From Podarcis muralis (lineage: Eukaryota): a stretch of DNA of 64,000 bases. Of this stretch, positions 15,076-56,395 are shown in pieces. A program made the translations under genes and the position numbers. Position 1 is the first letter of the stretch; each line of letters begins with the position of its first letter. The stretch spans positions 34,658,001 through 34,722,000 of the forward strand of contig NC_135664.1 of assembly GCF_964188315.1 (NCBI RefSeq), in the 5' to 3' direction. The notes under the pieces are model-generated. The model saw only the letters and a program-made list of their open reading frames with translations, did no database searches and was not told where the DNA came from.

Positions 15076-18000
15076 ATGAGGCGGTTGTGGCCGTGGCTCG
15101 TCTTGGGGCTGGTCGTCCCCGAGGAGGAGCCCGTCAAGAAGAACTTCCAACCCTACCCCCAGATTACTAACCAGAACTTTATCCGTCAGTACGTGGACGC
15201 CCACAACAACTTCCGCACCAAAGTCCAGCCCACCGCTTCCAACATGCTGTACATGGTGTGTCCCCGGCGTGGGGTGGAAGGAGGAAAGGGAGCCGTGGGC
15301 TTAGCTGGGGTGGGGTGTGGGTGTGCAGGTAGCGGGCAGTGCTGGATCTACCTATAAGCGAAACAAGCTATAGCAAGCATAGGCAAACTCGGCCCTTCGG
15401 ATGCTTTGGGACTACAACTCCCATCATCCCTAGCTAACAGGAGCAGTGGCCAGGGATTATGGGAGTTGTAGTCCCAAAAAAACATCTGGAGGGCCAAGTT
15501 TGCCTATGCCTGAGCTATAGCTTAGGGCCCTGCTCTCTTGGGGGCCCCAAAAAAAATTAAAGGGGGAAAAACATTTCCAAAATATATGATAAAAAACAAA
15601 ATAAAACCTACATCCAGCAACAGTGTTTTGTGTTGTGTAGGCTCCTATGATGTAATGCACCTGCTAGCCTGCTCCCTAAAATATCACTGGTTTTAGAAAC
15701 TTACTAGGTCCATAAATTACCATATAGCATCAAAAAAACAGCGACAATTTGCTGTTGACAAAGGACAGCTGGACATATAAACAGCCCCATTACCTTCGGT
15801 AGCTGAGGGCCTCATCACACCTAAATCCAGCCCTGGGGAAATGTGAATACTTCACTCCGACCAATTGTGCCGCAAATAGCTCGGTTTTGTTCCCCACCAC
15901 CAAAAAAAATAAAGCCTGCCCCTCCCAAAAAATAATTCCTGGCTACACCCATGAAGGGAGCTGAGACAATTTGCAGTGCCACTGGAGAGGCGAACCCCTC
16001 CCCCTGGCTTCTCCTTGGGCCCTAAAAGGGAGAAACTCCCACTGTCATCCACTACATCTTAAGGACAGTCAATGAACATTGGACATTTTTGAGAAGCAAA
16101 CCATGGCTGCCCTACAAGAGGGGTAGTGGGGGTGCCTGCCTCGGGCAGCCAGTGTTGGCTGTATTGAGGGCGGTGAGAGAGTAGCAGAGATGGGTAGAAC
16201 ACAGAAGTGAATAATATCACTGTACTCAAACCTTGGTTTCAACTGCTAATTTCCCACCTGGGCAGGGTCATTGTTTAAAACTGCCATTTTCCTTTGTGCC
16301 CCTCCATCCCTGCTTTATTCAAACCTCTGTCATTTTTCAAACTATTTTCCTCTCAGTTCTCTTCCTCTCCACTTCACTTTAACTTCTGTTTTAAACCACC
16401 AGTTTTCCCATGCCAGGTCATTCATTGGTGATGTGCTCCACCTACCTCACTTTGATTCCAGGATTGTGCTAAGGCACTACAAATCCACCAATGAGGGCTG
16501 TGCCATATGTCTTTTTTTATGTGTAAAGGAAGACATTGTTTGAGAGCTGGGTGGAAAAGGTATTGAAAGTGAAATATACTCAGAGTCGAGCGTGAATTTT
16601 ATGCCCTTTATTCAGCTCGTAGTAGCAATGAATGAAAATTTCCCCAAAACATCTAGCTATATATACATTATTTACACAATGGGCCCCATGTGATTGGCTA
16701 ATTCCAGGCTGCTCCTGTAGGCCAATCAGGTTGCAGATTCACTTCTTCCAGAAGCCTGATTGGCTGCTTCTGCAGGCCAATCAGGTTGCAGATTCACTTC
16801 CACCTGGAGCTGGATTGGGTGGCTCCTGCAGACCAATCAGGCTGCTACATTCTGGATCCTATTGTTCTAGGATTCAGCTCAGTACATAACAGAAAGAAAG
16901 ACTTGTAATCTGAATTTTGACTGAACTGAAAATGTGACATTGTTACATTTACTAGAGCTGCATAACAAAAATAATTAATAGCTGTGTGTGATACTTTTGT
17001 ATTTTGCAGACATTTGATCTCGCTTTAGCTAAAATAGCCAGAGAATGGGGAAAGAAATGCATATTTGAATATAACCCAGTTAATAATATTCACCCTGAAT
17101 ATGCATTTAGGCCGTTTGGAGAAAATATGTACAGGACACCTGCCAGAAGTAAACCATTTGATCCTGCTATTCCTATTTCAGTATTTCATGATGAAGTAAT
17201 ATACTACAACTACAGCAGCAACACATGTGAAATGATATGTAGACATTATCTTCAGGTAAGTTGTATTTTTCACTGGTCAGATTGTCAACCATTTTTGTAT
17301 CTTCAGAAACAGAAGCACCTTAAGGTTAGACATTTTCCTGGCACATGTAAATAATGAATACAGCTCTTAATCAGACACCAAAGATTTAACAGTTATCACC
17401 CCCAAATTAACAGAAATAGTATTCCATTTACATGTCAACCAGGATGATTGAATACTAACATAAAACATAAAGGTACCTTTAGCCAAATGACAATAAAGAG
17501 AGGAGTCTGAAGAGAAACTGAATATTACACAATGTAGTTTATATTATATAATCTACTTTTTTCCAGGTTGTTTGGGCTAATACTTATAAAGTTGGCTGTG
17601 CTGTTATCCGCTGTCGTCAATCACAAGATGGAAGGAGGAATAGTGCGACATTTGTATGCAATTATGGTCCATCGTAAGTTAACGAATGTTAAAGAGATCC
17701 AAACTTGTGTTTACACAAAGTGTTCTAACTTGCAGAATTGCATGAGTATTCACAGTTGAATTAAGGAGCAATCTTAACTGCTCTTTACAGAGCTATAGAA
17801 CCATTGGTGCATCTGCGGTTCTGCCATGCACAATGACTGGGACAGAAAGTACAGGACAGGCATATCACTGTGCCAGCCTCTGCCAGGGTGTAGGTGGCAG
17901 CTCAGTCCCTCCCCACCCATTTAAAACTGCTATCAGTGGGAACCCCACAGGCATCACCCCACTGGCAGCAACCAGAAGGAAGCTGACAGGCCTGTAGGGC

Positions 18001-21000
18001 TGGGCAAAGGTACACCCTTGCCTAATCCAAACCTCCCTAGCCTGGTGTAAAGGAGGTTGGATTGCTTTCTTACTGTATGTATGTATTGCATCTTTTACTG
18101 TTGATTGCAAAGCAAACAGAATACTCAACTGCTGTTTTCCAGCCATTTCTATGATTAACAATTATTTCTGTTATCCAAATGGTTAGAAATACAAAATGTG
18201 ATTAATAAGACATTCACAATTTTAGTTCTATTTCAACTGTAGTTTAAAATTTTATTGCATTGTAAGTACCGTACTCTTCCATGTATAAGACGAAGTTTTT
18301 TTACTCTAAAGTTATGTTCAAAAACTTGCCTCGTCTTATAGAAGGATAGTGAATGGGGTGGACGAGTGATTGGCTGCAGCTGCAAGCAGGAGCATGTCAG
18401 CGACAATTGTTGGCTGCTAGAAGGGCTGCTTTGCATTGGCTGCTGCTTCTCTAATTGGGTTGGTGATTGGCTTCTGCAGCAAACACTGCTGTTGATTGGC
18501 TGTCGCTGCCATGATTGGTGGCTGCTGTTCTGGGACACACGTGATTGCCAGTGGACAGCTTTTCTCAGTCCGGTATGAATTTTTTTTGCTGGGGAAGGGT
18601 CTGTTTGCGATTGGCTGTCGCTGTGGCAAGTGGGCGATTGTCTGCTGCTGGCAATTGTCAGTATCGATGCTGCATGTGAGTGATTTTTGGCACACACCCC
18701 TCCCAGCTGTAAAACTCTGGGCAATCCTTTGCAAAAAAACTCAACAACTCTGAGCCATCTCCCCTCCCCCTCCCATTTTCTTAAATTTGAGTCCCCCAAA
18801 ATAGGAGGCGTCTTATAGACGGGGGAGTCTTATAGACGGAAAAGTACAGTGTGTTGTCTCCCTAGCAGGGAGGAGCCATCAGTCATAGAATGCATCCTTC
18901 CATGAAGAAGCTTCTTGGTTCAGTCCTCAGTATCTCTGCTTAAATAATCATGTACCAGGTGCTGGGGAAATACCTGACATTCCAGGAGAATCACCAAATC
19001 AACTTCATGCACCCTAGAAAGTGGGCTCTGGTCCATGAAAACTTAGACTAAAATAATTTTTTGACAATGGCACTTTTTGTAGTTTCGACTACTACAGGAG
19101 ACCATTTTTTGTGTTTTTAACAGTGTTGTAAGTCACTTGGAGACCTTTAGGTAACAAGCGACTAAAGTTAATAAATAATAATACCAGATACCCTATTGCA
19201 ACTTTACTACACAAACCTTGTAGGGCACCAATCCAACCCCCTACATGATGGCTGCACTCGCTCACAGGTGAACTTCTGGGGCATTATACCTACAGTGAGT
19301 GGGGCCAGAGGCAAAAGAGGGCATGGCAGTAGATGAAACATTTACCTTTGCATAGTAGGCCATGTTCCAGTGACCAAGAGAGACCAAGCAAATAGATCAG
19401 TGTTGCAGAGCCAATACTGGTGACACTGGCACTTTGACAGGGCAGCAGCAAGATTTTGGTTAAATGGGTGCACTAGCAAAAACACCGGATTTACTCCACT
19501 GCTGTTCCCTCACAACCCAATCTTGCCTTTGCTTCATCCTCTTAAGCGGCAGTGATGTCAGTACTGTATCAGAAGGGTAGGTCTGCAGCACCATACTGGT
19601 CACTCCTGCCAGCCATGAAAAGCCAGAGGTCTCTATAACCTGTTCATATCCACACTTCTTAGTCTTTCAGCCAGTGCAAAGCTGGGAGTGTGGCCCAGGC
19701 AGAATTGTAAAAGCCAGGAAAGGATTAGAGGGATGCATTCAGCACCCAGGACTGAGGTTGTCCACTCTTCACAATTTGTTAGCATCTGTAACTTTTATTA
19801 TATTTATCATTGCCTTCGTTTTAATTTTCAGTAACTTTGTGTACTTAATTTGTTATTACTTTAATAAACTTTTGTTCTTCAGGATGGAAGTTGGAATTCA
19901 ACCATATAAACCAGGAAGGCCATGTAGTAAATGCCCAGGAGACAGGTGTCAAAATAGACTCTGTAGTAAGTATAGTGAATGATGCAAATGTTCATGATAA
20001 AGATTATTTAAACCATCAATTATGTTGGTTTTTGAGTTCCATTTGTATCACCTCTAGTAGGACATTCTAATGTGCTTCAGGCATGGAACGCAGGAAAGGC
20101 GAGTAGTGTTCTGGTGTTCACCTCTTTGCTTTGTCCCATGTCAGTTAATCCTTTGGGAAAAGGGGAATAATTGTGCTTTGGTGCACTGTTGCAGTAGAGA
20201 GACAACAGTTGCTTCCTTCCTTAATCTAGGTGATCTAGGTTCTTTTGAGAGGGATCTCATAGGAGGTCAGTGTCTCTGGGTGCTATAGAGTACAAAGCTG
20301 CATTTTCAGTCATTCCTGAAAAGTGGTCCTTAAAATATTGTTGTCAATACTAGTACTGAGCTAGTGTAGAGAAACAAAAGGGAACATTCCATTATACCTA
20401 TTAGTAGTTCTGTTCATGATTCAAGAAATCACATTCAGATATTTTACTGATTAATTGGTGTTCAGGTTTAAAGCTTTACACATGACTATATCTTATAAAA
20501 GTATGTGATTGCAAGGATACATAGAGTGCCTTTTGATTAGAGCAAAAGATAAGTGAGAAAACACAGTGCTCCCTGTTGCTAGCTCATCAAAAATTATTAC
20601 GTATCTGTTGGTTACTGCATATTGCCTGTTATTACCTGTACTTTGCCCATGTCTCTGTGGTTTTGAAAGGTGTCTAATGATTGTGGTGGTAGCCACCACT
20701 GTGTACCTCTGGACAAGGTATTACTGAAAACCAAATAAATTACAGTGGTACCTCAGGATGCTCCCGTTCCGGAGCCCCGTTCACATCCCGAATGGAACGC
20801 AAGATGCAACGGCGCGGGTCACATTTCGCCGCTACCACACATGCGTCATTTTGAGCGTCTGCGCATGCGCGAGCAGTGAAACACGGAAGTAACGCACTCC
20901 GTTACTTCCGGGTTGCCGTGGAGCGCAACTCGAACGGGTTCAACCAGAAGCACATTTAACTCGAGATATGACTGTACCTTCTTCCTTTCAGCTTCCAGAT

Positions 21001-21627
21001 TATAGAAAAAAGGTTATAGGCAGGACAGCAGATAGACTACAGTCTGAGCCTTCAAGTCATCAGTATTGGCGGGCAGTGGCGGTGGCAGAATTTCACTGTA
21101 ATTTTGTTATTAAAATTGGTTACTCACCTTACTCTTAACTTAAAACCTAATAGACTTGGGGTAAGGAGGGGGGCTTTCAACTTACCAGGTATTTATCAAA
21201 TAAATCACTGTACATTTTGGATGCTGAAATTTAATGGAAATGCTTTCACGTTTCCTGTCATATGGCTGAAAATAAAAACTCATAGCAAAATGCTAACATT
21301 TTTAAAGCCTTTTTTCACTTGTTACAACTATTTCCCTTTTGCAGGAAATTCTGAACGCGAAAAAGTAAACAACCGTATGTATTACATTTGTTTTATACTT
21401 TAATTTACTTAAAGAACAAAATTCAAATTCAGTGAAACTTTTTTATTTTTTAAAAAATAGGCTATTCACGATGGCATCCAACCTCTAAATTCAAGTTTAT
21501 ATGTGATGACTTCTGCATCGCTGTTGCAGTTTTAAGGCCATTATTAATGTTTGTAGCATTTGTAGCTGTTTACATCTTAAAACTCCATTATCCAGGTTTA
21601 GTTTTTAATACTAGGGTAGGTTACTGA
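15076..21627 (+). CDS. GLIPR1-like protein 2-like, tandem copy 1 (CAP/SCP domain + C-terminal TM), 270 aa
   Basis: Exons 15076-15255, 17010-17255, 17567-17673, 19883-19965, 21345-21374 and 21461-21627 are in phase with no stops. CAP motifs HNxxR, GEN, HYLQVVW, GCA and FVCNYGP; tail CDDFCIAVAVLRP resembles GLIPR1L2. AATAAA at 21796 and 21831. Confidence 0.92.
15374..15512. mobile_element. hAT-Charlie-type MITE
   Basis: TIR CA(A/G)GCATAGGCAAACT, 8-bp TSD AGCTATAG, internal GACTACAACTCCCATCATCCC hairpin family. Confidence 0.85.
16570..16891 (-). mobile_element. Solo LTR (Gypsy-type)
   Basis: On the minus strand it runs TGTTATGTAC...TATTTCA, with repeated CCAAT boxes, TATATATA and AATAAA. Flanked by 5-bp TSD GAAAG (16565-16569 and 16892-16896). 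Confidence 0.85.
18269..18849. mobile_element. Tc1/mariner-type MITE (CCGTA-TIR family) with internal GATTGGCTG repeats
   Basis: TA-CCGTACTCTTCCATGTATAAGAC...GTCTTATAGACGGAAAAGTACAG. Confidence 0.7.
20743..20974. mobile_element. Tc1/mariner (Tigger-type) MITE
   Basis: TA-CAGTGGTACCTC...GAGATATGACTG-TA with internal palindromes. Confidence 0.7.
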
Positions 21628-21844
21628 GCATATTTACATGAATGATAAAGATTATATTCCTGCATTTTATATTAAAGTAGATTTGCTTTGTTACATTGTT
21701 TCACATGTTATTTTGTGTTTTCTCAAACTGTATAAATTTACCTGTTACATATTAATGTAATATTAAATATTTTTAAACTGGAAAGATAAATTTAAAATAA
21801 AATATATGGTTATCTTGAATATTTTGTACAAATAAAAATTAAGC

Positions 21845-22917: not shown

Positions 22918-22923
22918 CTGAAA

Positions 22924-22956
<33 letters not shown>

Positions 22957-22964
<8 letters not shown>

Positions 22965-23048
22965 GACCTGATAAGAGTCCAGCTGATGAAGACCAGCACT
23001 GAATATATATGACCTGATAAGAGTCCAGCTGATGAAGACCAGCACTGA
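22957..23048. repeat. 46-bp perfect tandem duplication following (CA)n
   Basis: ATATATATGACCTGATAAGAGTCCAGCTGATGAAGACCAGCACTGA x2; (CA)n at 22927-22957. Confidence 0.9.
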
Positions 23049-23449
23049 AAGCATGACTTAGGCTCAAGTAGCTTCTGAATGGAATTGCTTGGGATTCGCC
23101 AGTCAAGAGTACCCGCTTCCCCCGCAGCATTTCAGCTGAACCACAGTTCAGATGGATTTAACACAACCACAGTAGCCAATCGCATATGTATGGACTGCAA
23201 TGGCGGGGGAGACAGAGAGGAGAGATAGAAAAGGACCCGCAAATGTCCTCTTTAAAAAGAGAGGAGAGCGGGAAGAGGCCCAGTGCACAAACCGGGAAAG
23301 AGAATCGTTCCGGAGATGGAGGTAGAGCCTCGAGAATGGCTGGTGCTGTTTAAAGCAGCAAGAGGTTTCTGAGCTCCGCACTTTAACATCTCGGTGCGAG
23401 TCTCGTCTGTGCAGGTGGAGCTCTGCAGCTGGTGGGGTCACAACCAAGC

Positions 23450-23578
23450 AAAGGAACGGCGGAAGCGTTCTAAGTGGAGGGCGGGGGTTCGGCACGGAGG
23501 CGGGAGGCAGTAGCGCCGCCTGAGGCCGTTAGGAAGCAACGGTCTCTCCGCGCGCGTCCCTAACTCCTCGCCGCAGCC
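23450..23578 (+). promoter_or_regulatory. CpG-island promoter of GLIPR1L2-like copy 2
   Basis: GC/CpG-rich, GC boxes, CCGTTAGGAAGCAACGG at 23526-23542. Confidence 0.55.
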
Positions 23579-26500
23579 ATGAGGCGCTTCTGGCCGTGCG
23601 CCGTCGTGCTGGGGCTGCTCGCCGTCGAGGGCGTGCGCGGCGCGCAGAAATTCGCCACCTATCCCGACATCACCAACAAGACCTTCATCGACGACTATAT
23701 CAACGCGCACAACGATCACCGCAGCGAAGTCCAGCCCCCCGCTTCCAACATGCTGTACATGGTGGGTGTCCCGGGCGCGGGGTGGGAGGAGGAAAGGAAA
23801 GCCCTCGTTTCCAGCTGGGCGCTTAGGAGAAGGAGCTTCCCATTGAACCCGCCGCCACCTTTTCTTTCGCAGGGCTCCTTGCCTGCGGTTTAAAAAGGCA
23901 GATACTTCAGGTCACGCCTTTGGGCATTGTAAGATGACGGTCTCAGGCAGAACAACAACAACAAAAAAGTTCCTTTCAGTAGCACCTTAAAAGGTAAAGG
24001 GACCCCTGACCATCTCGCTTTACTGGCCGAGGGAGCCGGCGTACAGCTTCTGGGTCATGTGGCCAGCATGACTGAGCCGCTTCTGATGAACCAGAGCAGC
24101 GCATGAAAACGCTGTTTACTTTCCCGCCAGAGCGGTACCTATTTATCTACTTGCACTTTGACGTGCTTTCGAACTGCTAGGTTGGCAGGAGCTGGGACCG
24201 AACAACGGGAGCTCACCCCGTCGCGGGGATTTGAACCGCCAAACTTCTGATCAGCAAGCCCTAGGCTCTGTGGCTTAACCCACAGCACCACCCGCCAACT
24301 AAGTTTGTTCTTGGTATGAGCTTGCGTGTGCGTGCACACTTCTTCAGTAACTAGGTCTCAGGCAGCTCATTGTGGTTATATCTGGGAAGGGATGAAGGAC
24401 CCTGGTGAGGTTTTCTGCCTCAGATTGCGAAGTAACCGCAGCAGCTCGAGGCTGAGAATAGTCACTGGTGGTTTTCTTTTCTTTTGGCGTTAACGCCCTT
24501 TGACCCGCCTCTGAAAGCTGTATGCGTAATTCACATGGTAGAATGAGAATAGATAGCTGGCTCTTCAAAAGCCCGGCAGGTATTATACTTACTGGTGCCA
24601 GTGAGTAATATTTAAGTAAAGGGTCTACCAGTGTGAGAGATAAGATCATAAAGGGAAGGCAAAGTGACTAACATTAAAACCAATTAAGCACATTCAATAA
24701 AACCATCTAAAAACATAACTAAACAATTAAAAGGGGGCAGAACTTGTTTGTTTTAGTGAAACTGAAGACGTGTTATCCATTAGAAGTGGGAAATGTTATT
24801 CAAAGCTGTGTGCATGATACTTTTCTGTTTTGCAGAGTTTTGATCTAGGTTTAGCTAAAATAGCGAGAGCATGGGGACGGAAATGCATTTTTGGACATAA
24901 TCCAAACAGAAAAGTCCACCCTGAAATTAAATATCAGCCATTTGGAGAAAATATATGGCGGGGATCTGCCTCCAGCCAACCATTTGATGCTGCTGCTGCC
25001 ATTAATGCATTTTACAGTGAAGTACAATACTATACCTACGATGACCACACATGTTCCAAAGTATGTGGTCATTATACTCAGGTAAGTTTCATCTTCATCT
25101 GCTTAGAAAATTTTAATCAAAACTTAAAGAACTTGAGTAATTTGAGACTCTGGATGCTTCCAGACTGTCATATTTTGATGTGATTCAGTCACATCCTGGC
25201 AAATTCAAGCTGTGCAATTAAAGTTAATTTGGAGCTCTTGCAAAAAAAAAACCTGCTTCCCCAAAATACTGGACTTTTTGCAGTCAGAAAAGTGATGGGG
25301 AAATGCCCTGGAAAGTGAGGCATAACATTTGCTTCACACAATGCTGTCTAATAATCTCTCCACAAATAAATCAGGATGAATGCTAAATAGCCAACACTAT
25401 CAAATCTTCAAACAAATCAGGTTGAACATTCATTAAACAGGCCGTCTGGAAGTGACCTCTGTAATCATACTTTGTGAAATAATCATATTCCTACCATCAC
25501 AATAGAAACTGCTTACTTATAAAATACATTGAATGCTTGAAGTTAATTAATTGACAACTTTCAGAAAAAGGTCCCCACTTCAGTTTCAGTTCTGTAGGGT
25601 TTTTTGAATTGCTAGAAGTTCTAACATCTATAAAAACTCGGAGCTACTAGCAATGGGCCAGCACTAAGTGTTGCAGGGCTTATGCATGGCAAGTTCTTAC
25701 CATGAGAATTAAAGGCAAATTGTCTTAAGACAACCCTTCTTTTAATGTCCTGTTCTGCTCTTTGCAGGTGTGTAGTTTACCCATGCAAAAAGCAACAAAG
25801 GTATAATTTACAAAGAAATGACCCCCTTGGTCATGACACACAGCAGACAAACAACTCCAAAATAAATATTAAACATTTGTTTGTAGTACTTTTATACCCC
25901 TTGTTTGTTAAAGTTGCACAAAGCAGTTTGATAATACTGATTAACAACTGTAACAACCCAAATTCAGTAGAAATAATTGCTAAGCTATCAGCACAAATTA
26001 CTGACAAATAGGCCAGGAAGCCCAAAGGTGTTTTATTCAATAGCCATGCTATTATTCTAAAACAAAGCATTAAAAGTTAGTGTGTGGATCTGTTGAAGTT
26101 TGGTAGGGCATGATATTTCCTAACAAATGTCTCTTTGTAACACAACATACTGAGTTTGTAGCATCCTTCTCTATCAATTGCATCAAAATCAATAATAATT
26201 AAATATTCAATTGGGGATAGTGTTCTGTTGCTTTATATTGGAGAACCATTATTTTATCCTCACAAATATTTTGGTTACATATTTCCCTGGCACACAGTTG
26301 ATTTTAGATACTATATTTCCATTGCTCAAGATGAGCAGAAATCATACGCCATTTTACATCATAACTGTCAACTTTTCCCTTTTATTGTGAGGAATCCTAT
26401 TCAGAATATGTTTTGCATATATATTTTAAGAACATAAGACAAACACCCGTGGTCCATCTAGTTAAGCATTTTCACAGTGACCAACCAGATTAGGGTACTT

Positions 26501-43857: not shown

Positions 43858-44199
43858 CGTGGTTTAGATCCTGCACCACTGTTCAGACGCTAGGAGCAAC
43901 AGACTGCCAGCCACAGGACACTTGGAACAACCACCATCTTACTCCGGAAGAGTAAACTCGGTTAGAATGGCAGTGCACGGCAGCGATGAGTTGGAGGCAA
44001 TTCTAGGAGAAATTCCCTTTGAATTGAACGGAGCTGCAGACACGCGCACAGCATCAGACCAACACGCGTGGAGAGCGGGGCAGGCTGGGCTTGATTTGAG
44101 CCAAAGCTCGCGAGAGATAAACCCTGGAAGCTGAAGAACAGCAAAAGATCAGAAAACAGAGTAAGGCTAAAATCCTGTACTGTACACGCCTGGTTAGAA

Positions 44200-44357
44200 A
44201 TAAGCCCCGCAGAACGCAATGGGGTCGACTTCGGATGAAGCGTGCAGCAGACCTCGCGCGCCGACCGTTGAAGGAGAGCACCCGCGCATGCGCACCCGCA
44301 CGCACGCACGCCGAACTGGCGCTTCCGACGTGCGAGGGCGCTGCCGCCGCCGCCGCC
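44200..44357 (+). promoter_or_regulatory. CpG-island promoter of GLIPR1L2 copy 4
   Basis: CpG-rich; NRF1-type CGCGCATGCGCA at 44283-44294 and MYB-type CCGTTG at 44265-44270. Confidence 0.6.
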
Positions 44358-47300: not shown

Positions 47301-50300
47301 AGCCAGGTGTTCATTCCGGGGGTCCATTCTTAACCTGAAACTGTTCTTAACCTGAAGCACCACTTTAGCTAATGGGGCCTCCCGCTGCCGCTGCACGATT
47401 TCTGTTCTCATCCTGAAGCAAAGTTCTTAACCCGAGGTTCTATTTCTGGGTTAGTGGAGTCTGTAACCCGAGGTACCACTGTATAGGGTCTGTAACCTGA
47501 GGTACCACTGTATAGGGGCAAATGATCTTTAAGGGAACTTGGCCCAAAGCTGTTCAGGATTTAACTTTATATGTTAGTAACAAGATCTTGAAAATAGCCG
47601 AGTAGTTATCAGCTGCCACTACTGTTCTAGGGACTAGGCAGGTATCCTGGTTCTAGACAGTTTAGGGCTTTTGAAATTCTGTATCTTTTAGGCATTTCAA
47701 AACAGGTAATATCTGTTTATAAACATCTGTTACTTTGAAGCAAGCCACTTTCAGAACTCGTGTCAGTGGAATAATCTCTAGGTCTAGACCAGGCTTCCTC
47801 AAACCCGGCCCTCCAGATCTTTTTTTAGCCTACAACTCCCATGATCCCTAGCTAGCAGGAGCAGTGGTCAGGGATGATGGGAATTGTAGTCTCAAACCAC
47901 CTGGAGGGCCGAGTTTGAGGAAGCCTGGTCTAGACTGCTTCCTTTACTACATGCTGCCTTTGGAGCAAGTACTCAAGGTGGTTTACAGTTTAGAACAGAG
48001 CATTAAATCTAATAGTTGTGATTCAAAAAGGGGGGGATGGAGAAGGAATAAGAAAATAAGCAGATTCAAATATTAATTCTTGCATAATGTTACATAATAT
48101 TCTAATAACACTGTATAGTTAATACAAGAAGCAGTTGCCAGTTGTTTCAGGCCTTTCAACTGTCCTCCTTAGAGAAACCTGTCTGGTCTCATCACTCTTT
48201 ACATTTTGCTGAGTAGATTGTGCTGAAGAACAGAGTTTTTCCAGGAAGGCTGGCTGAGACCTCCTACAGTTCTTTTTAGTAATTTTTCTGCTGCTTTGTT
48301 TTATTTTTCATTGTTTTATTTTTACTGATGATTGTTTTAAGCCTCTAGTGTTAGGCAATTTGGGATAAGTGGGATGTACATTTTTGAAAGTAAAAACCTT
48401 AATACTATACTTTCATCTTTAAAAGTTAAGCTCTTGAAAATTTAACTCTCATGTAGTTCAGCTCTAGTTAGCAAATCCCGTGGGGGCTTTGGCTGTTAGG
48501 GCTCTCTTCAAGCAATGATAATCATCTGATTATCAGAGCTTCAGAGTGCCTTGTAAAGAGCTTTGTAGGTCCTGCTGATCAGTGGTAAGTACAAATGGTT
48601 TTTGGGTTCAGGTGCAACTCTCCCTGCCTGAACCCAAATGCCGTAAATGAGCATGGCTTAGCTGGTTTTGGCTGATCAAATGGGGAGGCCTGGAGGACCT
48701 CAGTAACCCTGTCCTAAATTAATATGCATAAGTGCTTGAGTTGCTATGATACTGTTGACTAGATAATGCCAAGTTTCAGGATGAAACCAACTTAGACTGC
48801 AATCTATACCTACTTGTCTTGGCATATGCCCCATTGAACTCAACAGGACTTACTTCTGAGGATATTATGTACAGTATAAGATTGTTCTGCTTTAAGTTCT
48901 TGATCCAAATAAATATTTGCATAATGTTTGCAGTTCTGTTGAAATGTGGATGTGGAAACCTAGCCAGATGGGTGGGGCATAATAATAATAATAAATTTAT
49001 AGTCACTCGTGGAAGTTAGCTAATGAAAATGTGATTAAAAATGCATTATATATTTCTTATATCCTGCAGACATGGGATCTAGCTTTAGCTAGAACTGCTA
49101 GAGCATGGGGACAGAAGTGTATTTTTCAACATAACTATTTTATGAAGGAAAAAGGAGCTGGCCATCCTGATCCTAAACTTCATCCAGTGGGAGAAAATAT
49201 ATGGTTTGGACCTGCCCGCAGAGTGCCATTTAATTCTTCTAATGCCATCTATTCATGGTACTCGGATAAAGATTTCTATGATTACCAGGACAATTCGTGT
49301 TCACAAGTATGCAGACATTATAAACAGGTAACTTCTGTTCTCAGTTAAGATAATCTTAAAACATCAAGAAACATTGATCACTTAAGACAGCAAGTACATG
49401 AAGTGACTGTTATAATGGTGCTATATCATACTTTTTTTAAAAAAAAGATATTTATTGGCATTTTCACAAATTTTATAAAACATAAAAATCACAAAAAACA
49501 CAACAAAGAAAAACAAAAATACATAGAAAAAAGCAAAAAAACACATGTATAACTTCATTCCCTTATGTTCATGAAACTTTCTTTCCCGACCTCCTCATAC
49601 CTCTCCTTACTGTATTCCATTCTCTAATTAAGTCTCTTCAACAAATCCTTCCCTTAATTTCTGTTAGATTTTTAAGCTTACTTTTCATATTCACATGAAC
49701 ATTACAGCTAGCAACCCCTTAATTTCAAAATCAACATCGTCTTAACATTCAACAATTTTACAATATTTCTTAAGGTAGTCTTTAAATTTCTTCCAATCTT
49801 CTTCCGCCGTCTCTTTCCCCTGGTCTCGGATTCTGCCGGTCATCTCTGCCAGTTATATCATACTTTTTAAAGTAATCTGAAGGCTATCACATTTAGTTAT
49901 AAATATCCATTTAGTTATAAATGACATTGGATATTGAATTTATAACTAATGTCATGATGTCAGGATCCCAATACCTCAGGGATCACCTCTCCCCATATGA
50001 ATCAACCAGGACCCTGTGATCATCATCTGAAGCTCTTCTTCATGTGCCTCCTCCGCAAGAGGTCTGGAGGGTGGCATCATATGATCAGGCCTTTTCTGCA
50101 TTGGCTCCCCATTTATGGAAAGTTCTTTCCAGGGAAGCTCGGCTGGCACCTTCTTTGCATATCTTTAGGCACCAGGCAAAAATGTTTCTCTATAACCAGG
50201 CCTTCAGCTGATTAATATTCTATGGCCTTTCAAATGTGTTTGTGGGAGTTGGGGTTTGTTCTGGTTTTGGTTTTATGGTGTATTTTGTGTTCTCATTTTG

Positions 50301-53300
50301 TATTTTTATCTTGTGAACCACCCTATTATCTTCGGATGAAGGGCAGTACACAAATTTAAATCATCAACATCATCATCCAAAGAAGCACTACCTGATGAGA
50401 AGAGGTAGAATGGGACTTTCCCATCCCCTTTGCACCTAAGCCACCTGAAAAACCTCTACCGAAGTGGGTCAAGAAATCCTACTGAATGGAGTGGACTGTG
50501 GCACAGGGGAAGAGGAGATTACTAAAAATCAGGCACCTTCCAAGAGAGAAATTCTCATTCACAGAATATTTCTCTGCCTGGTTTTCAGCACCTTGTCTAC
50601 TAGAGCCCCTTTCAGTTCCCCATGTCATAGCCCACCCTACTCAGTAGGGTCCCCCAACCCCTCCAAAGAGGCTTTGAGGAAATTGCGGCCTGCTGATGAT
50701 TGTTGCTGGGAGAAAGACTGGTGGAAATCACCTTGTCCTGGCTCTAGTCTGCTTCCAAGTCATAGAATGGTAGAAATTAATGTAGAGATCATTTCTAAAA
50801 TTTCTGAATATATTTTTGTCAACTTCAGTTTTAATGAGATTATATAATTTTAATGAAATTATATAATTTTAATGAGATTATATAAATTGCAAGAATTATA
50901 GCTTTCATCAAAGTATATAAATTGCAAGATGTATAGTTCAGGATGCTGGAAGCTCCTTGAAATATCTGTAAAAACTTGGGATCTTCTCCTTTCCAAGCCC
51001 CATGGGCACCCAAGTTATTTATTTATTTATGAATGAATGAATGAAGCTTTTGTACCACTTTTCTTTTGGAATACACAAAGCAGCATACAATATTAAAACA
51101 AATAATAAAACAACATCAAGTGGCAGCAAAGGACCCTTGCTTACAGGAGATATAGGATAGCTACACGTGGAGTCACTGTGCTGTGCCAGTACCTGCCTTT
51201 GATGCAGCAATGTGGTGGCTCGGATCTGTACCTGATTTGTGTATTGGAAGGATTAGTTTGCTTTAATCACTCAGGCTTTGCACCTGCAAGGCATGAATGA
51301 TGATTGAAGGTTAGCCCTGTATATCATAAAATGCTCTCTCACCCCTTATATACCCAACCAATCACTGCACTCTGCAGGAGAGGGCTTTATGTATATGCCG
51401 TCTCATGAGGAGATCCACTCCATATGATGTAGGAATTGGGCCTTTAGTGTGGTGTCACCTATCCATTGGAACTTCCTTCTGCTGCATATGAGACGTGCCA
51501 TTTCTATTATCTTTTCTGAATCCATGCTGCACAAATATTCAAGGTTTGGTTTGGCCAGCACTCTGTACAAGTTGGATCCACTCTAAAGGTGAATGGTAAT
51601 GTACATTCTTGCAAACAGAACAGAAGAAGCAAAGCTTGGTTTAAGCTTGCTGCTTTCAAGCAATACACATAGGATGGAGAGGAATGCATAATTATGCACC
51701 TGCACCGTTTGCCACTTCTGAGAAGCATATACTTTCATTCGGTCATTAATCAGCCTCCTTCTGAATAAAATGGTCCATCATGTTTTAAATCATCTTATTA
51801 ACATTTAGTACAAGTCAGTTACCTCTGGTCACCTGAGCACCTTGTTTTGATTGGCTCAAGGCACTCCTGAGACCTCCCAGTCAGGCAGAAACCTGTTCTC
51901 TCTGCTGTAACTCAGTACCTGTGCCTATTGGCATGCCATATCTATTCTGTCTTGCTTCATCTTCAGTCTTAATCCTTTGTCTCTCAGGAACCCTCTCTCT
52001 TAAGGAAACCTAGCCTTTAAAATACCATTTCATTCAGTCTTCCCTATGGAGGCTGCTCCACAATCCTTGGCACCCAAACTTCTCCCTGAAAACAGAAATG
52101 TCTAGTTGTAACTATTTTCTGCCTTGTATCCTTTTCACTGTACCCTTTCATCTTATCTGTGTTTTGTTGTTTTATTTGTCGTGGTTACTGCCTCTTGAGG
52201 TGGGGTGAATAATCTTTTTCAGCCTAAGGCCCACATTCTGGATGCTACATACTACACACCGGTGCTGGGTGGGACCAGAGGCAAAAATGGGCAGAGCAAA
52301 GGCTATGAATTTTACCTTCATACCATAAACCACATTCCAGCCACACAAACGCCTGAGTTTTGTGCACTCCCATATCTCCGCCCTCAGTCGTGGCAAGCAA
52401 GAGACATTATCAAAGTTCACAAACACATTTCAGCCTGGCAAAAGCACTAGAGGAGGGAGTGGAGCAGGGTTTAGTGGTGTGGCCTAGGGAGAGGGGATGT
52501 GGCATATGGAGGGCCCTCCTGTAAATCTTGATATCCTTCTGTCTTTGTATGGTCCAGACCCAGCTTTTTGTTTTGTTTTTAGTTTTGCCCAAAGCTGTTG
52601 AGCTTTTTTTGTAAGATCTAGAAGAGGAAGTAGTTTCTGAGCTATTTTTAAGGAAATTCGCCAAAATCTACACTTCCAACATGTGTTGCCATATGTCCGG
52701 ATTTTCCCAAACATTAAAGCGATTTCCACCCAGACACTGTTTCCGATGGCTGAATCCCGGCAATGTCCGGTAAATTCTGAACGTATGACAACCCTTGTCT
52801 GTATAATAGAAGTATAATCTGTTGGTCAAGGGAATGTGGATTTAGATGCCCCGTGTATAATCTTGTGATAACTAACAATATTTTTCATGGGTGTAGCCAG
52901 GATTTTTGGTTTTTTTTGGGGGGGGGCAGAACTGACATGATTGGTCAGTTAGTTAAGTATTTCTATTGTTTTACTTGAAGGGGGGAGCAGCTGTCCACCC
53001 CCACTCACCTTGGCTAGGCTCATTCTTTAAGCCTCATCTTTTTATCCTGCAATTTTTGTTCAAGCCACAACACAGTATTACTTATTGACTGCAATTTTGG
53101 CAGTGTAAATAAATAAATATTACTCTGTATTAACCCAAATTGGGAATTGGCTGTCTTTGCTAATTCCACCAAATAATTGAGTGGAAATACCATGTAGCAG
53201 CCTCTGTGGCAGGTAACAATCCCTAGATTGAAGATCATCAATAATACATACACCTGTGTAGGCAGATCCCGTATGTAACTTTTAGGGGACACAGATAGGC

Positions 53301-56300
53301 TGATAAGGTTCAGCTGGTGAAGGCTGATCCACTGCAGGATGTTGCTGTAGCCTAAGAGAAGTTCCTTTCCACCAGCGAAGGCACTTCTGCCACATCCTGA
53401 CCCCAAAGACGAAAACCATTCACAGTTCTTTGTTCTGAAAACTGGAGGATTTGTACTAAATCTCTAAAGCCTAAATGCCTGGACTTGGTAACTATTAACA
53501 CAAATTGTACCTTTCTTTGTAAAATAAAATCTGCTCTCCCCCCCCCACCCCAGGTTGTTCGGGCTTCTACTTATAAGGTTGGCTGTGCTGTTGTTTTCTG
53601 TCGTAGACTTGATCGACATAGAAATACTGAATATTTCGTTTGCAATTATGGTCCGACGTAAGTTAACAAATGTTTAAGAGAATAAGAGATAAACCCAGCC
53701 AGTGACCTAAGAAGTGTAGGATTTTAGGTGATTTTTTCATTGACCGTGCACAAAGTGGCTGTGTAACTTTTCTAAGGCTTTGGTATTTTATTTAGCTTAA
53801 GTACTGTAAATATTTAAGGAGGGAGTCCTATGAATAGATAGCTGAGTATAAGTTTTATTGGACCCAATAGGGCTCACTTCTTCATAGACATGTATAGGAT
53901 TTGGCTGTAAGTGTCCAATTTTTTTTCATAAAGGAGTGCTGGTAGATATTAAGCAAATAAGTGTTTCTGAAGTACATAGAATTAAATGTACATGTTATTT
54001 GTCTTGCACTTAATTCAAATTTAATTTTAAATCGGTGATGGCTTCTTAAAAGACTCGCACTGCAAAAAAGAAGTAGAAGAAGAGGCTCAGAAGTTCACAT
54101 TGCAGACCCCTCACATAAGCAATTACTCATAGGGGTTGAAGTTCATGTAGTCATTACTGAACTGATCAAGGTTGCAGTGCAGTGGTTGGCCTCTTTGCTG
54201 TAACTTTAAAGGTCACATTTGGCAGTCCTAAATATTCTCTTCACAGATTTATTAATTGTGTATATATCACAGTCTATATCTAATCCACAGCATAGGACTG
54301 TTCAACTATTCTAACTCAGGAAAATCCATTTATAACCTAATATTTTTTAGTTGATGCCTCAACGCATAGGCAGTTTATTTGTTACAACTAAATAATTAAC
54401 CGTATTTTTCGCTCTATAAGACGCACCAGACCACAATACGCACCTAGTTTTTGGAGGAGGAAAACGAGAAAAAAAATATTCTGAATCTCAGAAGCCAGAA
54501 CAGCAAGAGGGATTGCTACGCAGTGAAAGCAGCAATCCCTCTTGCTGTTCTGGCTTCTGGGATAGCTGTGCAGCCTGCATTTGCTCCATAAGACGCACAC
54601 ACATTTCCCCTTACTTTTTAGGAGGGAAAAAGTCTTATAGAGCAAAAAATACGGTATATTCAGAATAGCTTGCCCTTTAGTCTTCAGTTTAGCTTGTGAA
54701 TTGAGTACCTTATTACATTCTGGAAATTATGCTCCTTAGTGACACCTACCCTTCAAGACCTTACAAAACAGGACAGCCCTGTAGTGCATGCCCAGAAGGA
54801 GACACTTGTCAAGACCATCTCTGTAGTAAGTACAGATCTGAGTAAAATGAACATTCATGAAAGGCTTTCTCACGCACATATGTATATATTTCTATTAACT
54901 TTAAAGCAATACGAGCTTCTCTTGTGTGTATATATGTATGTATATGCATGTGTCTATGTGTGTGTATGCACACACACATATATTTCTGTTAAGTTCAAGT
55001 CATGGAACTTAGAGCAAGGCAGGTTTGGTTGTCAAAGCAAACAATCTGCAAGACCTGGAAGGAAACCCGATCTTTTAAATACATTGTAGTAAATGGCTGC
55101 AGTTTCACAACACTGTGAAAAAGTAAAGTGCTGCACTATTCCAATGGGAAGAAAGCCTGCCTCCCAATCTAATACTGTATGTCTTAGATTCTGCTAGGAA
55201 GAACTCAAAGGGGGGGGGATTCCCACTCCCTTTCCCCAAAAAATCCATGTATTTTTACACCTCATATCATAATGATAGAATTGTGCTACACAATTGTACA
55301 AAATCCAGCTTCAAGGTTCCAGCAATTTTACATCCTTGTCTACAGTAGTGTGACAATGGTGTCAGACAATGCAGTCACAGGCATTGCACTACCACAGATT
55401 TGCTTACACAACTCATAATCTATGGAGATGCTTTCAGGCTGTATCCTGACTTCTTTGTTAACTCGTGCCTAATTAAAGTTCAAGAGTTTGGAGATGAGTT
55501 GATTTTTACCAAATACCATATTTTTCGCCCTATAGGGCGCACCGGCCCATAGGGCGCACTTTTTTTGGGGGGGGGGGGGAGAAAGAACCCCCCCCCCGAG
55601 CCCCAAAGAGCAAAGAAGCCATGACAGCAAGCGGGACCTCGCCATCGCTTGCGGGGCTGGGGGCGGGGGAAGCCCAAGCTTCCCCCGACCACAGCCCCCA
55701 GAACGGGTCCGGGAGTGAAGGCAAGGTTGCACGCAACCTCGCCATTGCTCCCGGAGCTTGCCAGGCTGGGGGGATAGCTTCCTGAAGCCTGGAGAGCGAG
55801 AGGGGTTGGTGCGCACCGACCCCTCTCGCTCTCCAGGCTTCAGCGAAAGCCTGCATTCGCCCCATAGGACGCACACACATTTCCCCTTCATTTTTGGAGG
55901 GGGAAAAGTGCGTCCTATAGGGCGAAAAATACGGTAAATGATTGTGTCATACACTGATGATTGCACATTCTGGATGCTGAAATTCTGTAGAAATGCTATG
56001 AGTTACCTGCCGCGCTCTGACTGAAAACAAGTAAAACCCATTGATAATATATTAATATTGTGAAACAGGTTTCTCCACTAGTTATAATGCTACTTTTCTC
56101 CTTGTGCAGGAAATTCAAGTCGTGACAAAATATACATCAAGCGTATGTATTACAATTAAATTATATAGCTCAAGTTTACATTTAAAATGACATTCTTGCC
56201 TAGTAAAAATATGTTTGTTTGTTTTAAATAGGCTATTCACGATGGTATCCTCCATGGGAACACAACCTTATATGTGATGACTCCTGTATTGTACTTGCAG

Positions 56301-56395
56301 TTTTAAGGCCATCACTAACACTTCTAGCATTTGTTACTGTTTACTGTTTACAGAAATGTTATCCAGATTTAATGCTGCAAACAGAAACTGTATGA
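44358..56395 (+). CDS. GLIPR1L2: GLIPR1-like protein 2, copy 4 (most similar to mammalian GLIPR1L2), 276 aa
   Basis: Exons 44358-44543, 49070-49327, 53554-53657, 54740-54825, 56110-56142 and 56232-56395. [22 protein letters not shown]...GENIWFGP...AIYSW parallels remembered human GLIPR1L2 ([22 protein letters not shown]...GENMWVGP...AIRSW); [15 protein letters not shown] parallels YRFWYPKWE..CDPLC. AATAAA at 56509. Confidence 0.88.
44960..45470 (+). mobile_element. RTE-clade LINE 3' fragment (decayed)
   Basis: ..[55 protein letters not shown] followed by a CPSC zinc-knuckle-like remnant. Confidence 0.8.
46773..47310 (-). mobile_element. CR1 LINE 3' RT fragment
   Basis: [83 protein letters not shown]. 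Confidence 0.95.
47313..47510. mobile_element. Tigger-type MITE, left end lost, right TIR duplicated
   Basis: Family of 10013-10238; ..GTAACC(C/T)GAGGTACCACTG-TATAGGG occurs twice. Confidence 0.75.
47790..47927. mobile_element. hAT-Charlie MITE
   Basis: TIR CAGGCTTCCTCAAAC and 8-bp TSD GTCTAGAC (NTCTAGAN Charlie preference). Confidence 0.9.
49437..49853 (-). mobile_element. 5'-truncated L1 3' end with TSD
   Basis: Minus-strand [36 protein letters not shown], 3' UTR with AATAAA and poly(A). 15-bp TSD TATATCATACTTTTT at 49422-49436 and 49854-49868. Confidence 0.85.
50040..50350 (+). mobile_element. L2-type LINE 3' fragment
   Basis: ..AGGCCTTTTCTG..GCTCCCC..TGGAA..CC..GAAG..GCTGGCACC..CCAGGCCTT..TGTGAACCACCCT..GGGCAGTACACAAAT pattern; decayed. 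Confidence 0.5.
50826..50886. repeat. 19-bp minisatellite x3
   Basis: TTTTAATGA(G/A)ATTATATAA repeated three times. Confidence 0.8.
52889..53020. mobile_element. Short PIF/Harbinger-like MITE (second copy ~59970-60100)
   Basis: GGGTGTAGCCAGGATTT..GGGGGGC..TGACATGATTGGTCAGTTA..GCAGCTGTCC..GCTA is shared by both sites. Confidence 0.5.
54400..54654. mobile_element. Tc1/mariner-type MITE (CCGTA-TIR family)
   Basis: CCGTATTTTTCGCTCTATAAGAC...GTCTTATAGAGCAAAAAATACGG-TA. Confidence 0.8.
55516..55934. mobile_element. Tc1/mariner-type MITE (CCGTA-TIR family)
   Basis: TA-CCATATTTTTCGCCCTATAGGGCGCA...TGCGTCCTATAGGGCGAAAAATACGG-TA. Confidence 0.8.

What the first reader, a model, noticed from the sequence alone, without database searches (positions are those of the whole stretch)
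15076..56395. Four intact, deeply diverged GLIPR1L2-like genes in tandem: a lineage-specific CAP-protein expansion
Seen: four complete 6-exon genes with identical intron phases, no stops or frameshifts, each with its own CpG-island first exon, poly(A) signal and C-terminal TM. Copies 2 and 3 share only 48/82 residues in exon 2 (hand count). Copies 1-3 share derived features (246-nt exon 2, TWD to T/SFD, WxxE to FxxE), while copy 4 keeps the mammal-like states. Known: mammals have one GLIPR1L2 (testis-enriched) and GLIPR1L1 acts in sperm-egg interaction; the CAP family also includes reptile CRISP toxins. Inference: a maintained family of membrane-anchored CAP proteins, plausibly gamete-recognition or immune surface molecules. 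No GLIPR1L1-type gene is evident in the window.
Basis: partly seen in the sequence, partly recalled or inferred. Interest (0 to 1): 0.78.

Follow-up and report, generated by a model that had tools for sequence, protein, structure and literature searches.

The report
Four tandem lizard GLIPR1-like genes
The wall lizard has four intact, fast-evolving, side-by-side copies of a membrane-anchored CAP-family gene related to the mammalian sperm proteins GLIPR1L1 and GLIPR1L2; they are real but already in NCBI's annotation, and they come from gene duplication within lizards and snakes, so they are not copies of GLIPR1L2 itself.

Summary
Window 15076-56395 (+) holds four complete six-exon CAP-domain genes of 270, 270, 270 and 276 aa. 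All splice sites are GT-AG, the intron phases are identical (0,0,2,1,1), and each first exon lies in a CpG island. Each protein has a C-terminal transmembrane helix.

The window is Podarcis muralis. My four models equal current RefSeq proteins, which NCBI names "GLIPR1-like protein 1" or "GLIPR1-like".

- **Orthology:** in a careful ML tree, mammalian GLIPR1L1 and GLIPR1L2 are sisters (94/88) and all squamate copies form one clade (100/100). Joining copy 4 with GLIPR1L2 is rejected (AU p = 4e-5). Its "mammal-like" states are retained ancestral states.
- **Age of the duplications:** the copy-4 type split from the rest before geckos diverged. Copies 1-3 arose later, in the lacertid/amphisbaenian lineage.
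- **Conservation:** the four-gene array is intact in P. raffonei and Zootoca; in Lacerta, copies 1 and 3 read intact and only parts of 2 and 4 were in hand.
- **Rate:** evolution is fast (dN/dS 0.40-1.60 against Zootoca), yet reading frames are preserved.

A sperm-surface role is inferred by homology only. A fifth CAP gene of GLIPR1 type starts at 62185. Interest is moderate to low.

The parts
15076..21627 (+). Copy 1 (c1), 270 aa; CDS exons 15076-15255, 17010-17255, 17567-17673, 19883-19965, 21345-21374, 21461-21627
   Evidence: Model built. It is 100% identical to P0193 = XP_028601541.2 'GLIPR1-like protein 1 isoform X1 [Podarcis muralis]'. The exon 3 translation hits Pfam CAP (E = 3.9e-4); exon 2 falls below threshold. 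Orthologs are intact in P. raffonei, Zootoca and Lacerta.
23579..30047 (+). Copy 2 (c2), 270 aa; CDS exons 23579-23761, 24836-25081, 26654-26760, 29233-29321, 29775-29807, 29893-30047
   Evidence: Model built. It is 100% identical to P0155 = XP_028602651.2. Exon 2 hits Pfam CAP at E = 1.4e-5. It matches the human GLIPR1 crystal structure 3Q2R at E = 3e-60 over residues 27-216. The AF2 model has pLDDT 90.3 and its best fold match is 3Q2R, TM-score 0.91 normalised by target length.
33280..41536 (+). Copy 3 (c3), 270 aa; CDS exons 33280-33450, 35429-35674, 37510-37628, 40514-40602, 41259-41291, 41382-41536
   Evidence: Model built. It is identical to P0494 = XP_028602650.2. Orthologs are intact in P. 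raffonei, Lacerta and Zootoca; the Zootoca copy is not among the called genes of L003/L004 but reads through.
44358..56395 (+). Copy 4 (c4), 276 aa; CDS exons 44358-44543, 49070-49327, 53554-53657, 54740-54825, 56110-56142, 56232-56395
   Evidence: Model built. It equals the last 276 aa of P0481 = XP_028602938.2, whose model starts at an upstream in-frame ATG at 44235. The lacertid orthologs named are 276 aa. Orthologs are intact in P. raffonei and Zootoca.
14001..15500 (.). CpG island over c1 exon 1
   Evidence: 500-nt windows with GC above 0.5 and CpG o/e above 0.6. Exon 1 +-300 nt has GC 0.60 and o/e 0.72.
23001..24500 (.). CpG island over c2 exon 1
   Evidence: GC 0.59, o/e 0.92.
32751..33500 (.). 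CpG island over c3 exon 1
   Evidence: GC 0.60, o/e 0.81.
44001..45250 (.). CpG island over c4 exon 1
   Evidence: GC 0.63, o/e 1.09.
62185..62367 (+). First coding exon of a fifth CAP gene (GLIPR1 type), 5.8 kb downstream of c4; the rest lies beyond the window
   Evidence: A 61-aa open frame ending at a GTAAGG donor in phase 0. Its best protein matches fall in the sauropsid GLIPR1 clade, 56-70% identity. It has no CpG island (GC 0.36, o/e 0.35). A CAP gene of 261-265 aa is called at the same place in Zootoca and P. raffonei.

Best explanation
The region is a tandem array of four functional paralogs of the GLIPR1-like (GLIPR1L) branch of the CAP/SCP superfamily.

**Architecture.** Each gene encodes a type-I membrane protein made of these parts:
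- an N-terminal signal-like hydrophobic segment
- one CAP domain with the fold of human GLIPR1
- a Cys-rich stalk
- a conserved juxtamembrane motif, CDxxC-I-x4-L-R-P
- one transmembrane helix
- a 14-18 residue tail

**Origin.** The array arose by repeated tandem duplication inside squamates. The source was a single sauropsid GLIPR1L gene lying between CAPS2/RIC3 and GLIPR1. That gene is most likely the co-ortholog of both mammalian GLIPR1L1 and GLIPR1L2.
- The copy-4 type separated first, before geckos diverged.
- Copies 1-3 arose later, on the lacertid/amphisbaenian line.
- The four-gene state is shared by Podarcis, Lacerta and Zootoca.

**Evolutionary rate.** Amino acids change quickly, while cysteines, splice sites and reading frames are kept.

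**CAP cavity.** c2 and c3 keep the full His-Glu-Glu-His tetrad. c1 and c4 have lost parts of it.

**Function (inferred, not shown).** The proteins are displayed on a cell surface with the CAP domain outside. Male germ cells or sperm are the most likely site, as for mammalian GLIPR1L1. There they would take part in cell-cell or cell-matrix recognition, under the kind of rapid turnover typical of reproductive proteins. I put about 0.4 on the sperm role.
For: **Shown**
- The gene models are intact, with identical phases, and equal RefSeq proteins.
- CAP family: Pfam hits exon by exon; PDB 3Q2R GLIPR1 at E = 3e-60; AF2 pLDDT 90.3 with helix 236-262; Foldseek top hit 3Q2R with TMt 0.91; hydropathy peaks.
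- Careful tree: GLIPR1L is separate from GLIPR1; mammal L1+L2 94/88; squamates 100/100; c4-type clade with geckos 100/98; c1-c3 plus Rhineura 88/86.
- The c4-type + L2 clade is rejected at p = 4e-5.
- Synteny in this window is CAPS2 - RIC3 - c1-c4 - GLIPR1. RIC3 and GLIPR1-type neighbours recur in Lacerta, Rhineura, Elgaria and Paroedura.
- Orthologs of all four are intact in P. raffonei and Zootoca. In Lacerta, c1 and c3 are intact.

**Selection on the frame, c1 against Zootoca**
- There is one in-frame indel. About 7 are expected from c1's own clean introns (Poisson p = 0.007).
- P(no stop | 69 random substitutions) is 0.05.
- P(no stop) at paralog-level divergence is 5e-4.

**Rate**
- dN/dS for P. 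muralis against Zootoca is 1.60, 0.54, 0.86 and 0.40 for c1-c4.
- c1's nonsynonymous difference per site (0.094) exceeds its clean-intron divergence (0.067), Fisher p = 0.02.

**Homology basis for function**
- Mouse and human GLIPR1L1/L2 are testis-enriched and GLIPR1L1 binds IZUMO1, as reported in PMC12917576.
Against: - No expression data could be examined here, so transcription rests on RefSeq models only.
- CpG-island promoters are more typical of broadly expressed genes than of testis-specific ones.
- The mouse Glipr1l1-3 triple knockout is fertile, so even in mammals the reproductive role is subtle.
- c1 evolves at dN/dS of about 1, and no pairwise test shows dN/dS significantly above 1. 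Relaxed constraint on c1 is therefore hard to separate from positive selection.
- The AU test does not reject sauropsid genes being L2 orthologs (p = 0.21). It also does not reject a lacertid-only origin of c1-c3 (p = 0.09).
- Gene conversion between tandem copies in stem squamates could inflate squamate monophyly.
- The position of the gecko-only clade is unresolved with respect to the two types.
Confidence: 0.8

Rival explanations
1. All four genes are co-orthologs of GLIPR1L2. The L1/L2 duplication predates the mammal-sauropsid split, and GLIPR1L1 was lost in lizards (or in all sauropsids).
For: - The AU test does not reject a clade of mammalian L2 plus all sauropsid GLIPR1L genes excluding L1 (lnL difference 4.1, p = 0.21).
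- Eutherian L2 and the lizard genes share the CDxxC...LR transmembrane-start motif, which L1 lacks.
- The c4-type and mammalian L2 have both lost the second His of the CAP tetrad.
Against: - The ML tree joins L1 and L2, each with marsupial and eutherian members, at 94/88.
- The shared motif is also in lungfish, caecilian and sauropsid GLIPR1, so it is ancestral.
- The lizard proteins lack the 38-71 residue tail that follows the transmembrane segment in eutherian L2.
- A specific c4-type + L2 clade is rejected (p = 4e-5).
Confidence: 0.12
2. Part of the array, above all copy 1, is drifting toward pseudogene status. On this view it is an annotated but functionless duplicate whose frame has merely not been hit yet.
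For: - c1 has dN/dS of 1.0-1.65 between genera.
- It has lost the first His of the tetrad in Podarcis. In Lacerta and Zootoca it has lost the conserved Trp of the VVW motif and has Gln in place of the second Glu; Lacerta has also lost the second His.
- The gene calls for Zootoca and Lacerta give only truncated c1 products of 172 and 224 aa.
Against: - The full six-exon frame, all splice sites and all 12 cysteines are intact in four species.
- Only one indel is seen, and it is in frame, against about 7 expected at the intron rate (p = 0.007).
- P(no stop) is 0.05 for the Zootoca comparison alone.
- The nonsynonymous difference per site exceeds intron divergence (p = 0.02). That points to positive selection more than to drift.
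Confidence: 0.08
3. The genes are functional but are not gamete proteins. They would act in somatic tissues like GLIPR1 itself, in immune or epithelial cells or in lipid/sterol or metal binding at the cell surface. Rapid change would then be driven by pathogens.
For: - All four promoters are CpG islands.
- The closest solved structure is GLIPR1.
- Many CAP proteins act in defence or lipid binding (titles of the hits).
- Nothing here ties the lizard genes to testis.
Against: - In the tree the genes belong to the GLIPR1L clade and not to GLIPR1. A separate GLIPR1-type gene follows the array.
- The characterised members of that clade are testis-enriched.
Confidence: 0.3

Closest known systems
Mammalian GLIPR1L1 (testis-enriched, sperm acrosomal/raft protein, IZUMO1 partner)
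   Same: It falls in the same GLIPR1L clade and in the same genomic neighbourhood between CAPS2 and GLIPR1. It has a single CAP domain with the same exon logic, and NCBI gives this name to the lizard genes.
   Different: Eutherian L1 proteins are shorter (241-254 aa). In most of those sampled no strong C-terminal hydrophobic helix or CDxxC...LRP motif was found by my regex and hydropathy survey. The lizard genes are not one-to-one orthologs of it.
Mammalian GLIPR1L2
   Same: It has a C-terminal transmembrane helix preceded by a CDxxC...LR motif. It has lost the His pair of the CAP cavity, as the c4-type has partly done.
   Different: Eutherian L2 has a 38-71 residue tail after the helix, against 14-18 residues here. 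The tree places L2 with L1 and not with any lizard copy, and a c4-type + L2 clade is rejected.
GLIPR1 (RTVP-1), crystal structures 3Q2R/3Q2U
   Same: It is the best sequence and fold match: E = 3e-60, 49% identity, TM-score 0.91 normalised by target length. The layout is the same: signal peptide, CAP domain, stalk and transmembrane helix.
   Different: It forms a separate clade in the tree. The lizard's own GLIPR1-type gene starts at 62185.
Mouse Glipr1l3 and other lineage-specific GLIPR1L duplicates
   Same: It is a tandem, lineage-restricted duplication at the same locus. PMC12917576 says Glipr1l3 is found only in mice.
   Different: The event is independent. The lizard array is older and larger, with four copies and paralog dS of 0.44-0.75.
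Reptile CRISP venom proteins (natrin, triflin, pseudecin, helothermine type)
   Same: They share the CAP domain fold.
   Different: The Foldseek and phmmer matches to CRISP structures are much weaker than to GLIPR1 (E about 1e-16 against 4e-26, and 1e-22 to 1e-30 against 3e-60). The lizard proteins end in a transmembrane helix where CRISPs have a C-terminal ion-channel-regulator domain, and they lie in a different clade. No link to toxins is suggested.

Membership tests
CAP/SCP superfamily (Pfam PF00188) | Sequence match to the CAP domain profile | tested here: met
   Tested exon by exon, by reference. Exon 2 of c2 and c4 reach the gathering score (26.4 and 23.0 bits against 21.1). Exon 2 of c3 scores 19.0 bits. 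Exon 3 of c1 scores 21.7 and exon 3 of c4 scores 19.2. Exon 2 of c1 gives no hit on its own. The full-length database proteins identical to c1 and c2, and the one near-identical to c4, carry PF00188.
CAP/SCP superfamily (Pfam PF00188) | Alpha-beta-alpha sandwich fold | tested here: met
   The AF2 model of c2 has pLDDT 90.3. Foldseek hits to 54 CAP structures have E <= 0.001, and the best is GLIPR1 3Q2R with TMt 0.91.
CAP/SCP superfamily (Pfam PF00188) | His-Glu-Glu-His cavity tetrad and the GHYTQVVW signature | tested here: inconclusive
   The tetrad is complete in c2 and c3. c1 has Tyr for the first His. c4 has Asp for the second Glu and Arg for the Trp of VVW. In Zootoca and Lacerta, c4 also lacks one or both His. 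Assignment of the tetrad positions rests on my knowledge of CAP structures plus the alignment to 3Q2R.
GLIPR1-like (GLIPR1L) clade of the GLIPR1 subfamily | Groups with GLIPR1L1/L2 and their bird and turtle relatives, apart from GLIPR1 | tested here: met
   In the careful ML tree of 78 proteins, the branch that separates the GLIPR1 sequences and the two outgroups from the 66 GLIPR1L rows has support 97/94. Squamates are 100/100 inside the GLIPR1L side.
GLIPR1-like (GLIPR1L) clade of the GLIPR1 subfamily | Position between CAPS2 and GLIPR1 | tested here: met
RIC3 and EF-hand genes are called in orthologous loci. A GLIPR1-type exon 1 lies downstream. The mammalian gene order is from my own knowledge.
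GLIPR1L2 orthogroup | One-to-one or co-orthology with mammalian GLIPR1L2 to the exclusion of GLIPR1L1 | tested here: inconclusive
   The ML tree says no, with L1+L2 sisters at 94/88. The AU test cannot reject L2 + sauropsid genes (p = 0.21). The stricter c4-type + L2 grouping is rejected (p = 4e-5).
GLIPR1L2 orthogroup | Long tail after the transmembrane helix | tested here: not met
   Eutherian L2 has 38-71 residues after the hydrophobic peak. The four lizard proteins have 14-18.
CRISP subfamily | C-terminal cysteine-rich ion-channel-regulator domain, secreted | tested here: not met
   The C-terminus is a transmembrane helix. CRISP structures match the CAP domain only, and more weakly than GLIPR1 does.

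The most novel reading that the evidence does not exclude
The squamate GLIPR1L arrays are a recurrently duplicating gamete-recognition family under positive selection. Copy number differs between geckos, anoles, lacertids, amphisbaenians and anguids. On this reading copy 1 evolves faster than neutral DNA because of sexual conflict or sperm competition. The copies with and without the metal-binding tetrad would have split into different molecular roles.
Probability: 0.22. Interest if true: 0.55.

Novelty: new member of a known kind. Interest (0 to 1): 0.3.

Why it matters
Little is known about the molecules of sperm-egg interaction in reptiles. A fast-evolving, membrane-anchored family related to a mammalian IZUMO1 partner gives a concrete candidate set for such work.

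The array also corrects a naming problem. As a genomic fact it is ordinary: a tandem expansion of a known family, already in RefSeq.

Tried and rejected
- **c4-type as the specific ortholog of GLIPR1L2.** Rejected by the AU test.
- **Extra CAP exons or pseudogene fragments in the window.** tblastn with all four proteins found only the 24 exons and the exon 1 at 62185, on the + strand only.
- **Segmental-duplication traces in introns.** Self-blastn shows paralog similarity only at exons and their flanks (68-76%), plus interspersed repeats.
- **Regional hot spots of amino-acid change.** The elevated pN/pS is spread over all exons, with no clear hot spot.
- **Literature on lizard or bird GLIPR1L.** Four searches found no such paper. 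The one chicken sperm paper only cites bovine GLIPR1L1.
- **Earlier scan notes on GLIPR1 in this genome.** None were found by words.
- **Joined (spliced) models.** Searches used single exons by reference or database proteins returned by the tools, which turned out identical to the models. The joined frames were assembled only inside scripts from window coordinates.
- **Not attempted.** I ran no complex prediction, because no binding claim is made. I ran no codon-site likelihood tests, because no such program was at hand and there were too few species.
- **Failed call.** One look-up of encoding contigs failed on a queue and was repeated successfully.
- **Human sequence.** No human contig was met.
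Full report
**What is in the sequence**

An all-against-all comparison of stop-to-stop open frames showed five groups of four paralogous + strand frames between 15 and 56.4 kb; the sixth exon, of 30-33 nt, was found when the splice sites were traced. It also showed a fifth relative of the first-exon frame at 62.1 kb.

Tracing splice sites gave four six-exon models with canonical GT-AG introns and the same intron phases (0,0,2,1,1). None has an internal stop. The products are 270, 270, 270 and 276 aa.

Exon 2 is 246 nt in copies 1-3 and 258 nt in copy 4. The hand count of 48/82 identical residues between copies 2 and 3 is exact.

- Each first exon sits in a CpG island: GC 0.59-0.63 and o/e 0.72-1.09, against a window mean of 0.41 for both.
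- Poly(A) hexamers follow each stop.
- tblastn with all four proteins finds nothing else in the window except the fifth exon 1.

**Identity of the window and of the genes**

Pfam CAP matched exon 2 of c2, c3 and c4 and exon 3 of c1 and c4.

A profile of the four exon-2 translations was run against the representative library. It returned 1476 relatives, the best a 270-aa protein.

The tools themselves returned full-length database proteins that proved identical to my models:
- c1 = XP_028601541.2
- c2 = XP_028602651.2
- c3 = XP_028602650.2
- c4 = the last 276 aa of XP_028602938.2

All are from Podarcis muralis and are named 'GLIPR1-like protein 1' or 'glioma pathogenesis-related protein 1-like'. 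So the array is already in RefSeq. I found no paper about it.

**The protein**

The protein equal to c2 matches the crystal structure of human GLIPR1 (3Q2R) at E = 3e-60 over residues 27-216.

An AlphaFold2 model built on 58 homologs has mean pLDDT 90.3. It shows these elements:
- an N-terminal helix at 5-17, signal-like
- the CAP sandwich
- a short stalk
- one long helix at 236-262

Foldseek returns 3Q2R first, with a TM-score of 0.91 normalised by target length.

Hydropathy gives a 19-residue peak of 2.15-2.54 in all four copies, followed by 14-18 residues. The helix begins with a CDxxC-I-x4-L-R-P motif.

A survey of the tree set shows where this motif occurs:
- present in lungfish, caecilian, sauropsid GLIPR1, sauropsid GLIPR1L and eutherian GLIPR1L2
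- absent from mammalian GLIPR1, from marsupial GLIPR1L1 and, but for one partial match, from eutherian GLIPR1L1

The motif is therefore ancestral and does not mark GLIPR1L2.

**Gene tree**

I ran three word searches and three cluster look-ups. These gave named GLIPR1, GLIPR1L1 and GLIPR1L2 proteins from eutherians, marsupials, monotremes, birds, turtles, crocodilians, tuatara and many squamates.

A careful ML tree of 78 proteins gave the following support values (ultrafast bootstrap / SH-aLRT):
- GLIPR1 is separated from GLIPR1L.
- Mammalian L2 (marsupial plus eutherian, 100/100) joins platypus plus L1 at 94/88.
- All squamate GLIPR1L form one clade at 100/100, sister to turtles (99/85).

Inside squamates:
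- A c4-type clade contains copy 4, an Elgaria gene and two gecko genes (100/98).
- A gecko-only clade is separate.
- A third clade (100/99) has copies 1-3 and the Rhineura gene together (88/86), sister to snakes, an anguid and iguanians.

AU tests gave three results:

| Constrained grouping | p-AU | Verdict |
|---|---|---|
| c4-type + L2 | 4e-5 | rejected |
| L2 + all sauropsid genes | 0.21 | not rejected |
| Copies 1-3 as a lacertid-only clade | 0.09 | not rejected |

The most likely reading is that the lizard genes are co-orthologs of L1 and L2 together. Copy 4's 'mammal-like' states are retained ancestral states. The W-to-F change in 'TWD' marks the whole non-gecko, non-cordylid c1-3 type and not only the lacertid copies.

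**Synteny and copy number**

Loci fetched around database proteins show these gene orders:

| Species | Order |
|---|---|
| P. raffonei | c1-c2-c3-c4-GLIPR1 type |
| Zootoca | c1-c2-c3-c4-GLIPR1 type |
| Lacerta | the same genes behind CAPS2 and RIC3 |
| Rhineura | RIC3, then one gene spread over 42 kb |
| Elgaria | CAPS2 - one c1-3-type gene - RIC3 - c4-type - GLIPR1 |
| Paroedura (gecko) | RIC3 - a - b ... c4-type - another CAP gene |

The two-type layout is thus old in squamates. The number of c1-3-type genes varies by lineage.

**Selection**

Within P. muralis the paralogs are 52-61% identical, with dS 0.44-0.75 and dN/dS 0.52-0.72.

Orthologous exons were recovered by blastn. All four genes read through intact in P. 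raffonei and Zootoca, and c1 and c3 do so in Lacerta.

dN/dS for P. muralis against Zootoca:

| Copy | dN/dS |
|---|---|
| c1 | 1.60 |
| c2 | 0.54 |
| c3 | 0.86 |
| c4 | 0.40 (below 1, Fisher p = 0.003) |

For c1, no pairwise test shows dN/dS significantly above 1. Several lines of evidence still argue against a drifting pseudogene:
- Its nonsynonymous difference per site (59/625) exceeds the divergence of its own well-aligned introns (169/2536), p = 0.02.
- It has one in-frame indel where about seven are expected at the intron rate, p = 0.007.
- Random placement of its 69 substitutions leaves the frame open in only 5% of trials.
- All 12 cysteines are unchanged across the four species.

This fits a functional, fast-changing protein better than a drifting pseudogene. 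It does not prove positive selection.

**CAP cavity**

Copies 2 and 3 keep His-Glu-Glu-His. Copy 1 has Tyr for the first His. Copy 4 has Asp for the second Glu and Arg for the signature Trp.

The c4-type in Zootoca, Lacerta, Elgaria and a gecko lacks one or both His, as does a mammalian L2. This parallel loss is convergent, given the tree.

**Function**

Nothing here measures expression. In mammals, GLIPR1L1 and L2 are testis-enriched and GLIPR1L1 binds IZUMO1. Even so, mice lacking Glipr1l1-3 are fertile (PMC12917576).

The sperm-surface reading for the lizard genes is an inference from clade membership and from rapid evolution. I give it about 0.4. A somatic or immune role is the main functional rival.

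**Verdict**

This is a tandem expansion of a known family that is already annotated but not studied. It is of moderate to low interest unless expression and selection tests tie it to reproduction.

Noticed in passing
window 62185-62367 (+): First coding exon of a fifth CAP gene, 5.8 kb after copy 4. It is AT-rich with no CpG island. Its best matches are sauropsid GLIPR1-clade proteins.
   Followed up: partly
window 43083-43313 versus 44565-44788: A 231-nt inverted duplication at 94% identity. The start of copy 4's intron 1 is repeated in reverse about 1.1 kb upstream of its ATG, so exon 1 and its CpG island lie between inverted arms.
   Followed up: no
window 44235-44357 (+): The current RefSeq model of copy 4 (317 aa) starts at an upstream in-frame ATG. 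That would bury the signal-like segment 41 residues inside the protein. The older model and the lacertid orthologs named are 276 aa.
   Followed up: partly
window 24047-24295, 26792-27147, 35831-36189: A CpG-rich repeat of about 250-360 nt (81-93% identity) lies in introns of copies 2 and 3. It accounts for the extra CpG-island calls at about 26.8 and 35.8 kb.
   Followed up: no
window 5352-5717 versus 32022-32403: A 380-nt segment at 90% identity is shared between the CpG-rich region near 5.5 kb and the region about 0.9 kb upstream of copy 3's ATG.
   Followed up: no
window 10011-10241, 29452-29673, 39411-39962, 47310-47520: Copies of one interspersed repeat of about 220 nt (70-90% identity, both orientations), including an inverted pair inside copy 3's intron 3.
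   Followed up: no
L003:20077-25028 and L004:3681-5012 (Zootoca vivipara): The ortholog of copy 3 is intact (270 aa, all splice sites present), yet no gene is called there in the collection's gene table.
   Followed up: partly
window exon 4 donors (19965, 29321, 40602, 54825): Reading through the exon 4 donor meets a stop after 5-21 codons in every copy. That would give a secreted form without the membrane helix. The Lacerta c1 database protein (224 aa, 'partial') ends in exactly this way.
   Followed up: no
c2 and c4 proteins against older RefSeq versions: The older P. muralis RefSeq versions differ from the window by three amino acids in copy 2 and one in copy 4. This may be within-species polymorphism or an assembly revision.
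   Followed up: no
L009 and L011 (Elgaria multicarinata): In Elgaria the RIC3-family gene lies between the two GLIPR1L genes. In lacertids, Rhineura and the gecko it lies upstream of all of them, so there has been a local rearrangement.
   Followed up: no
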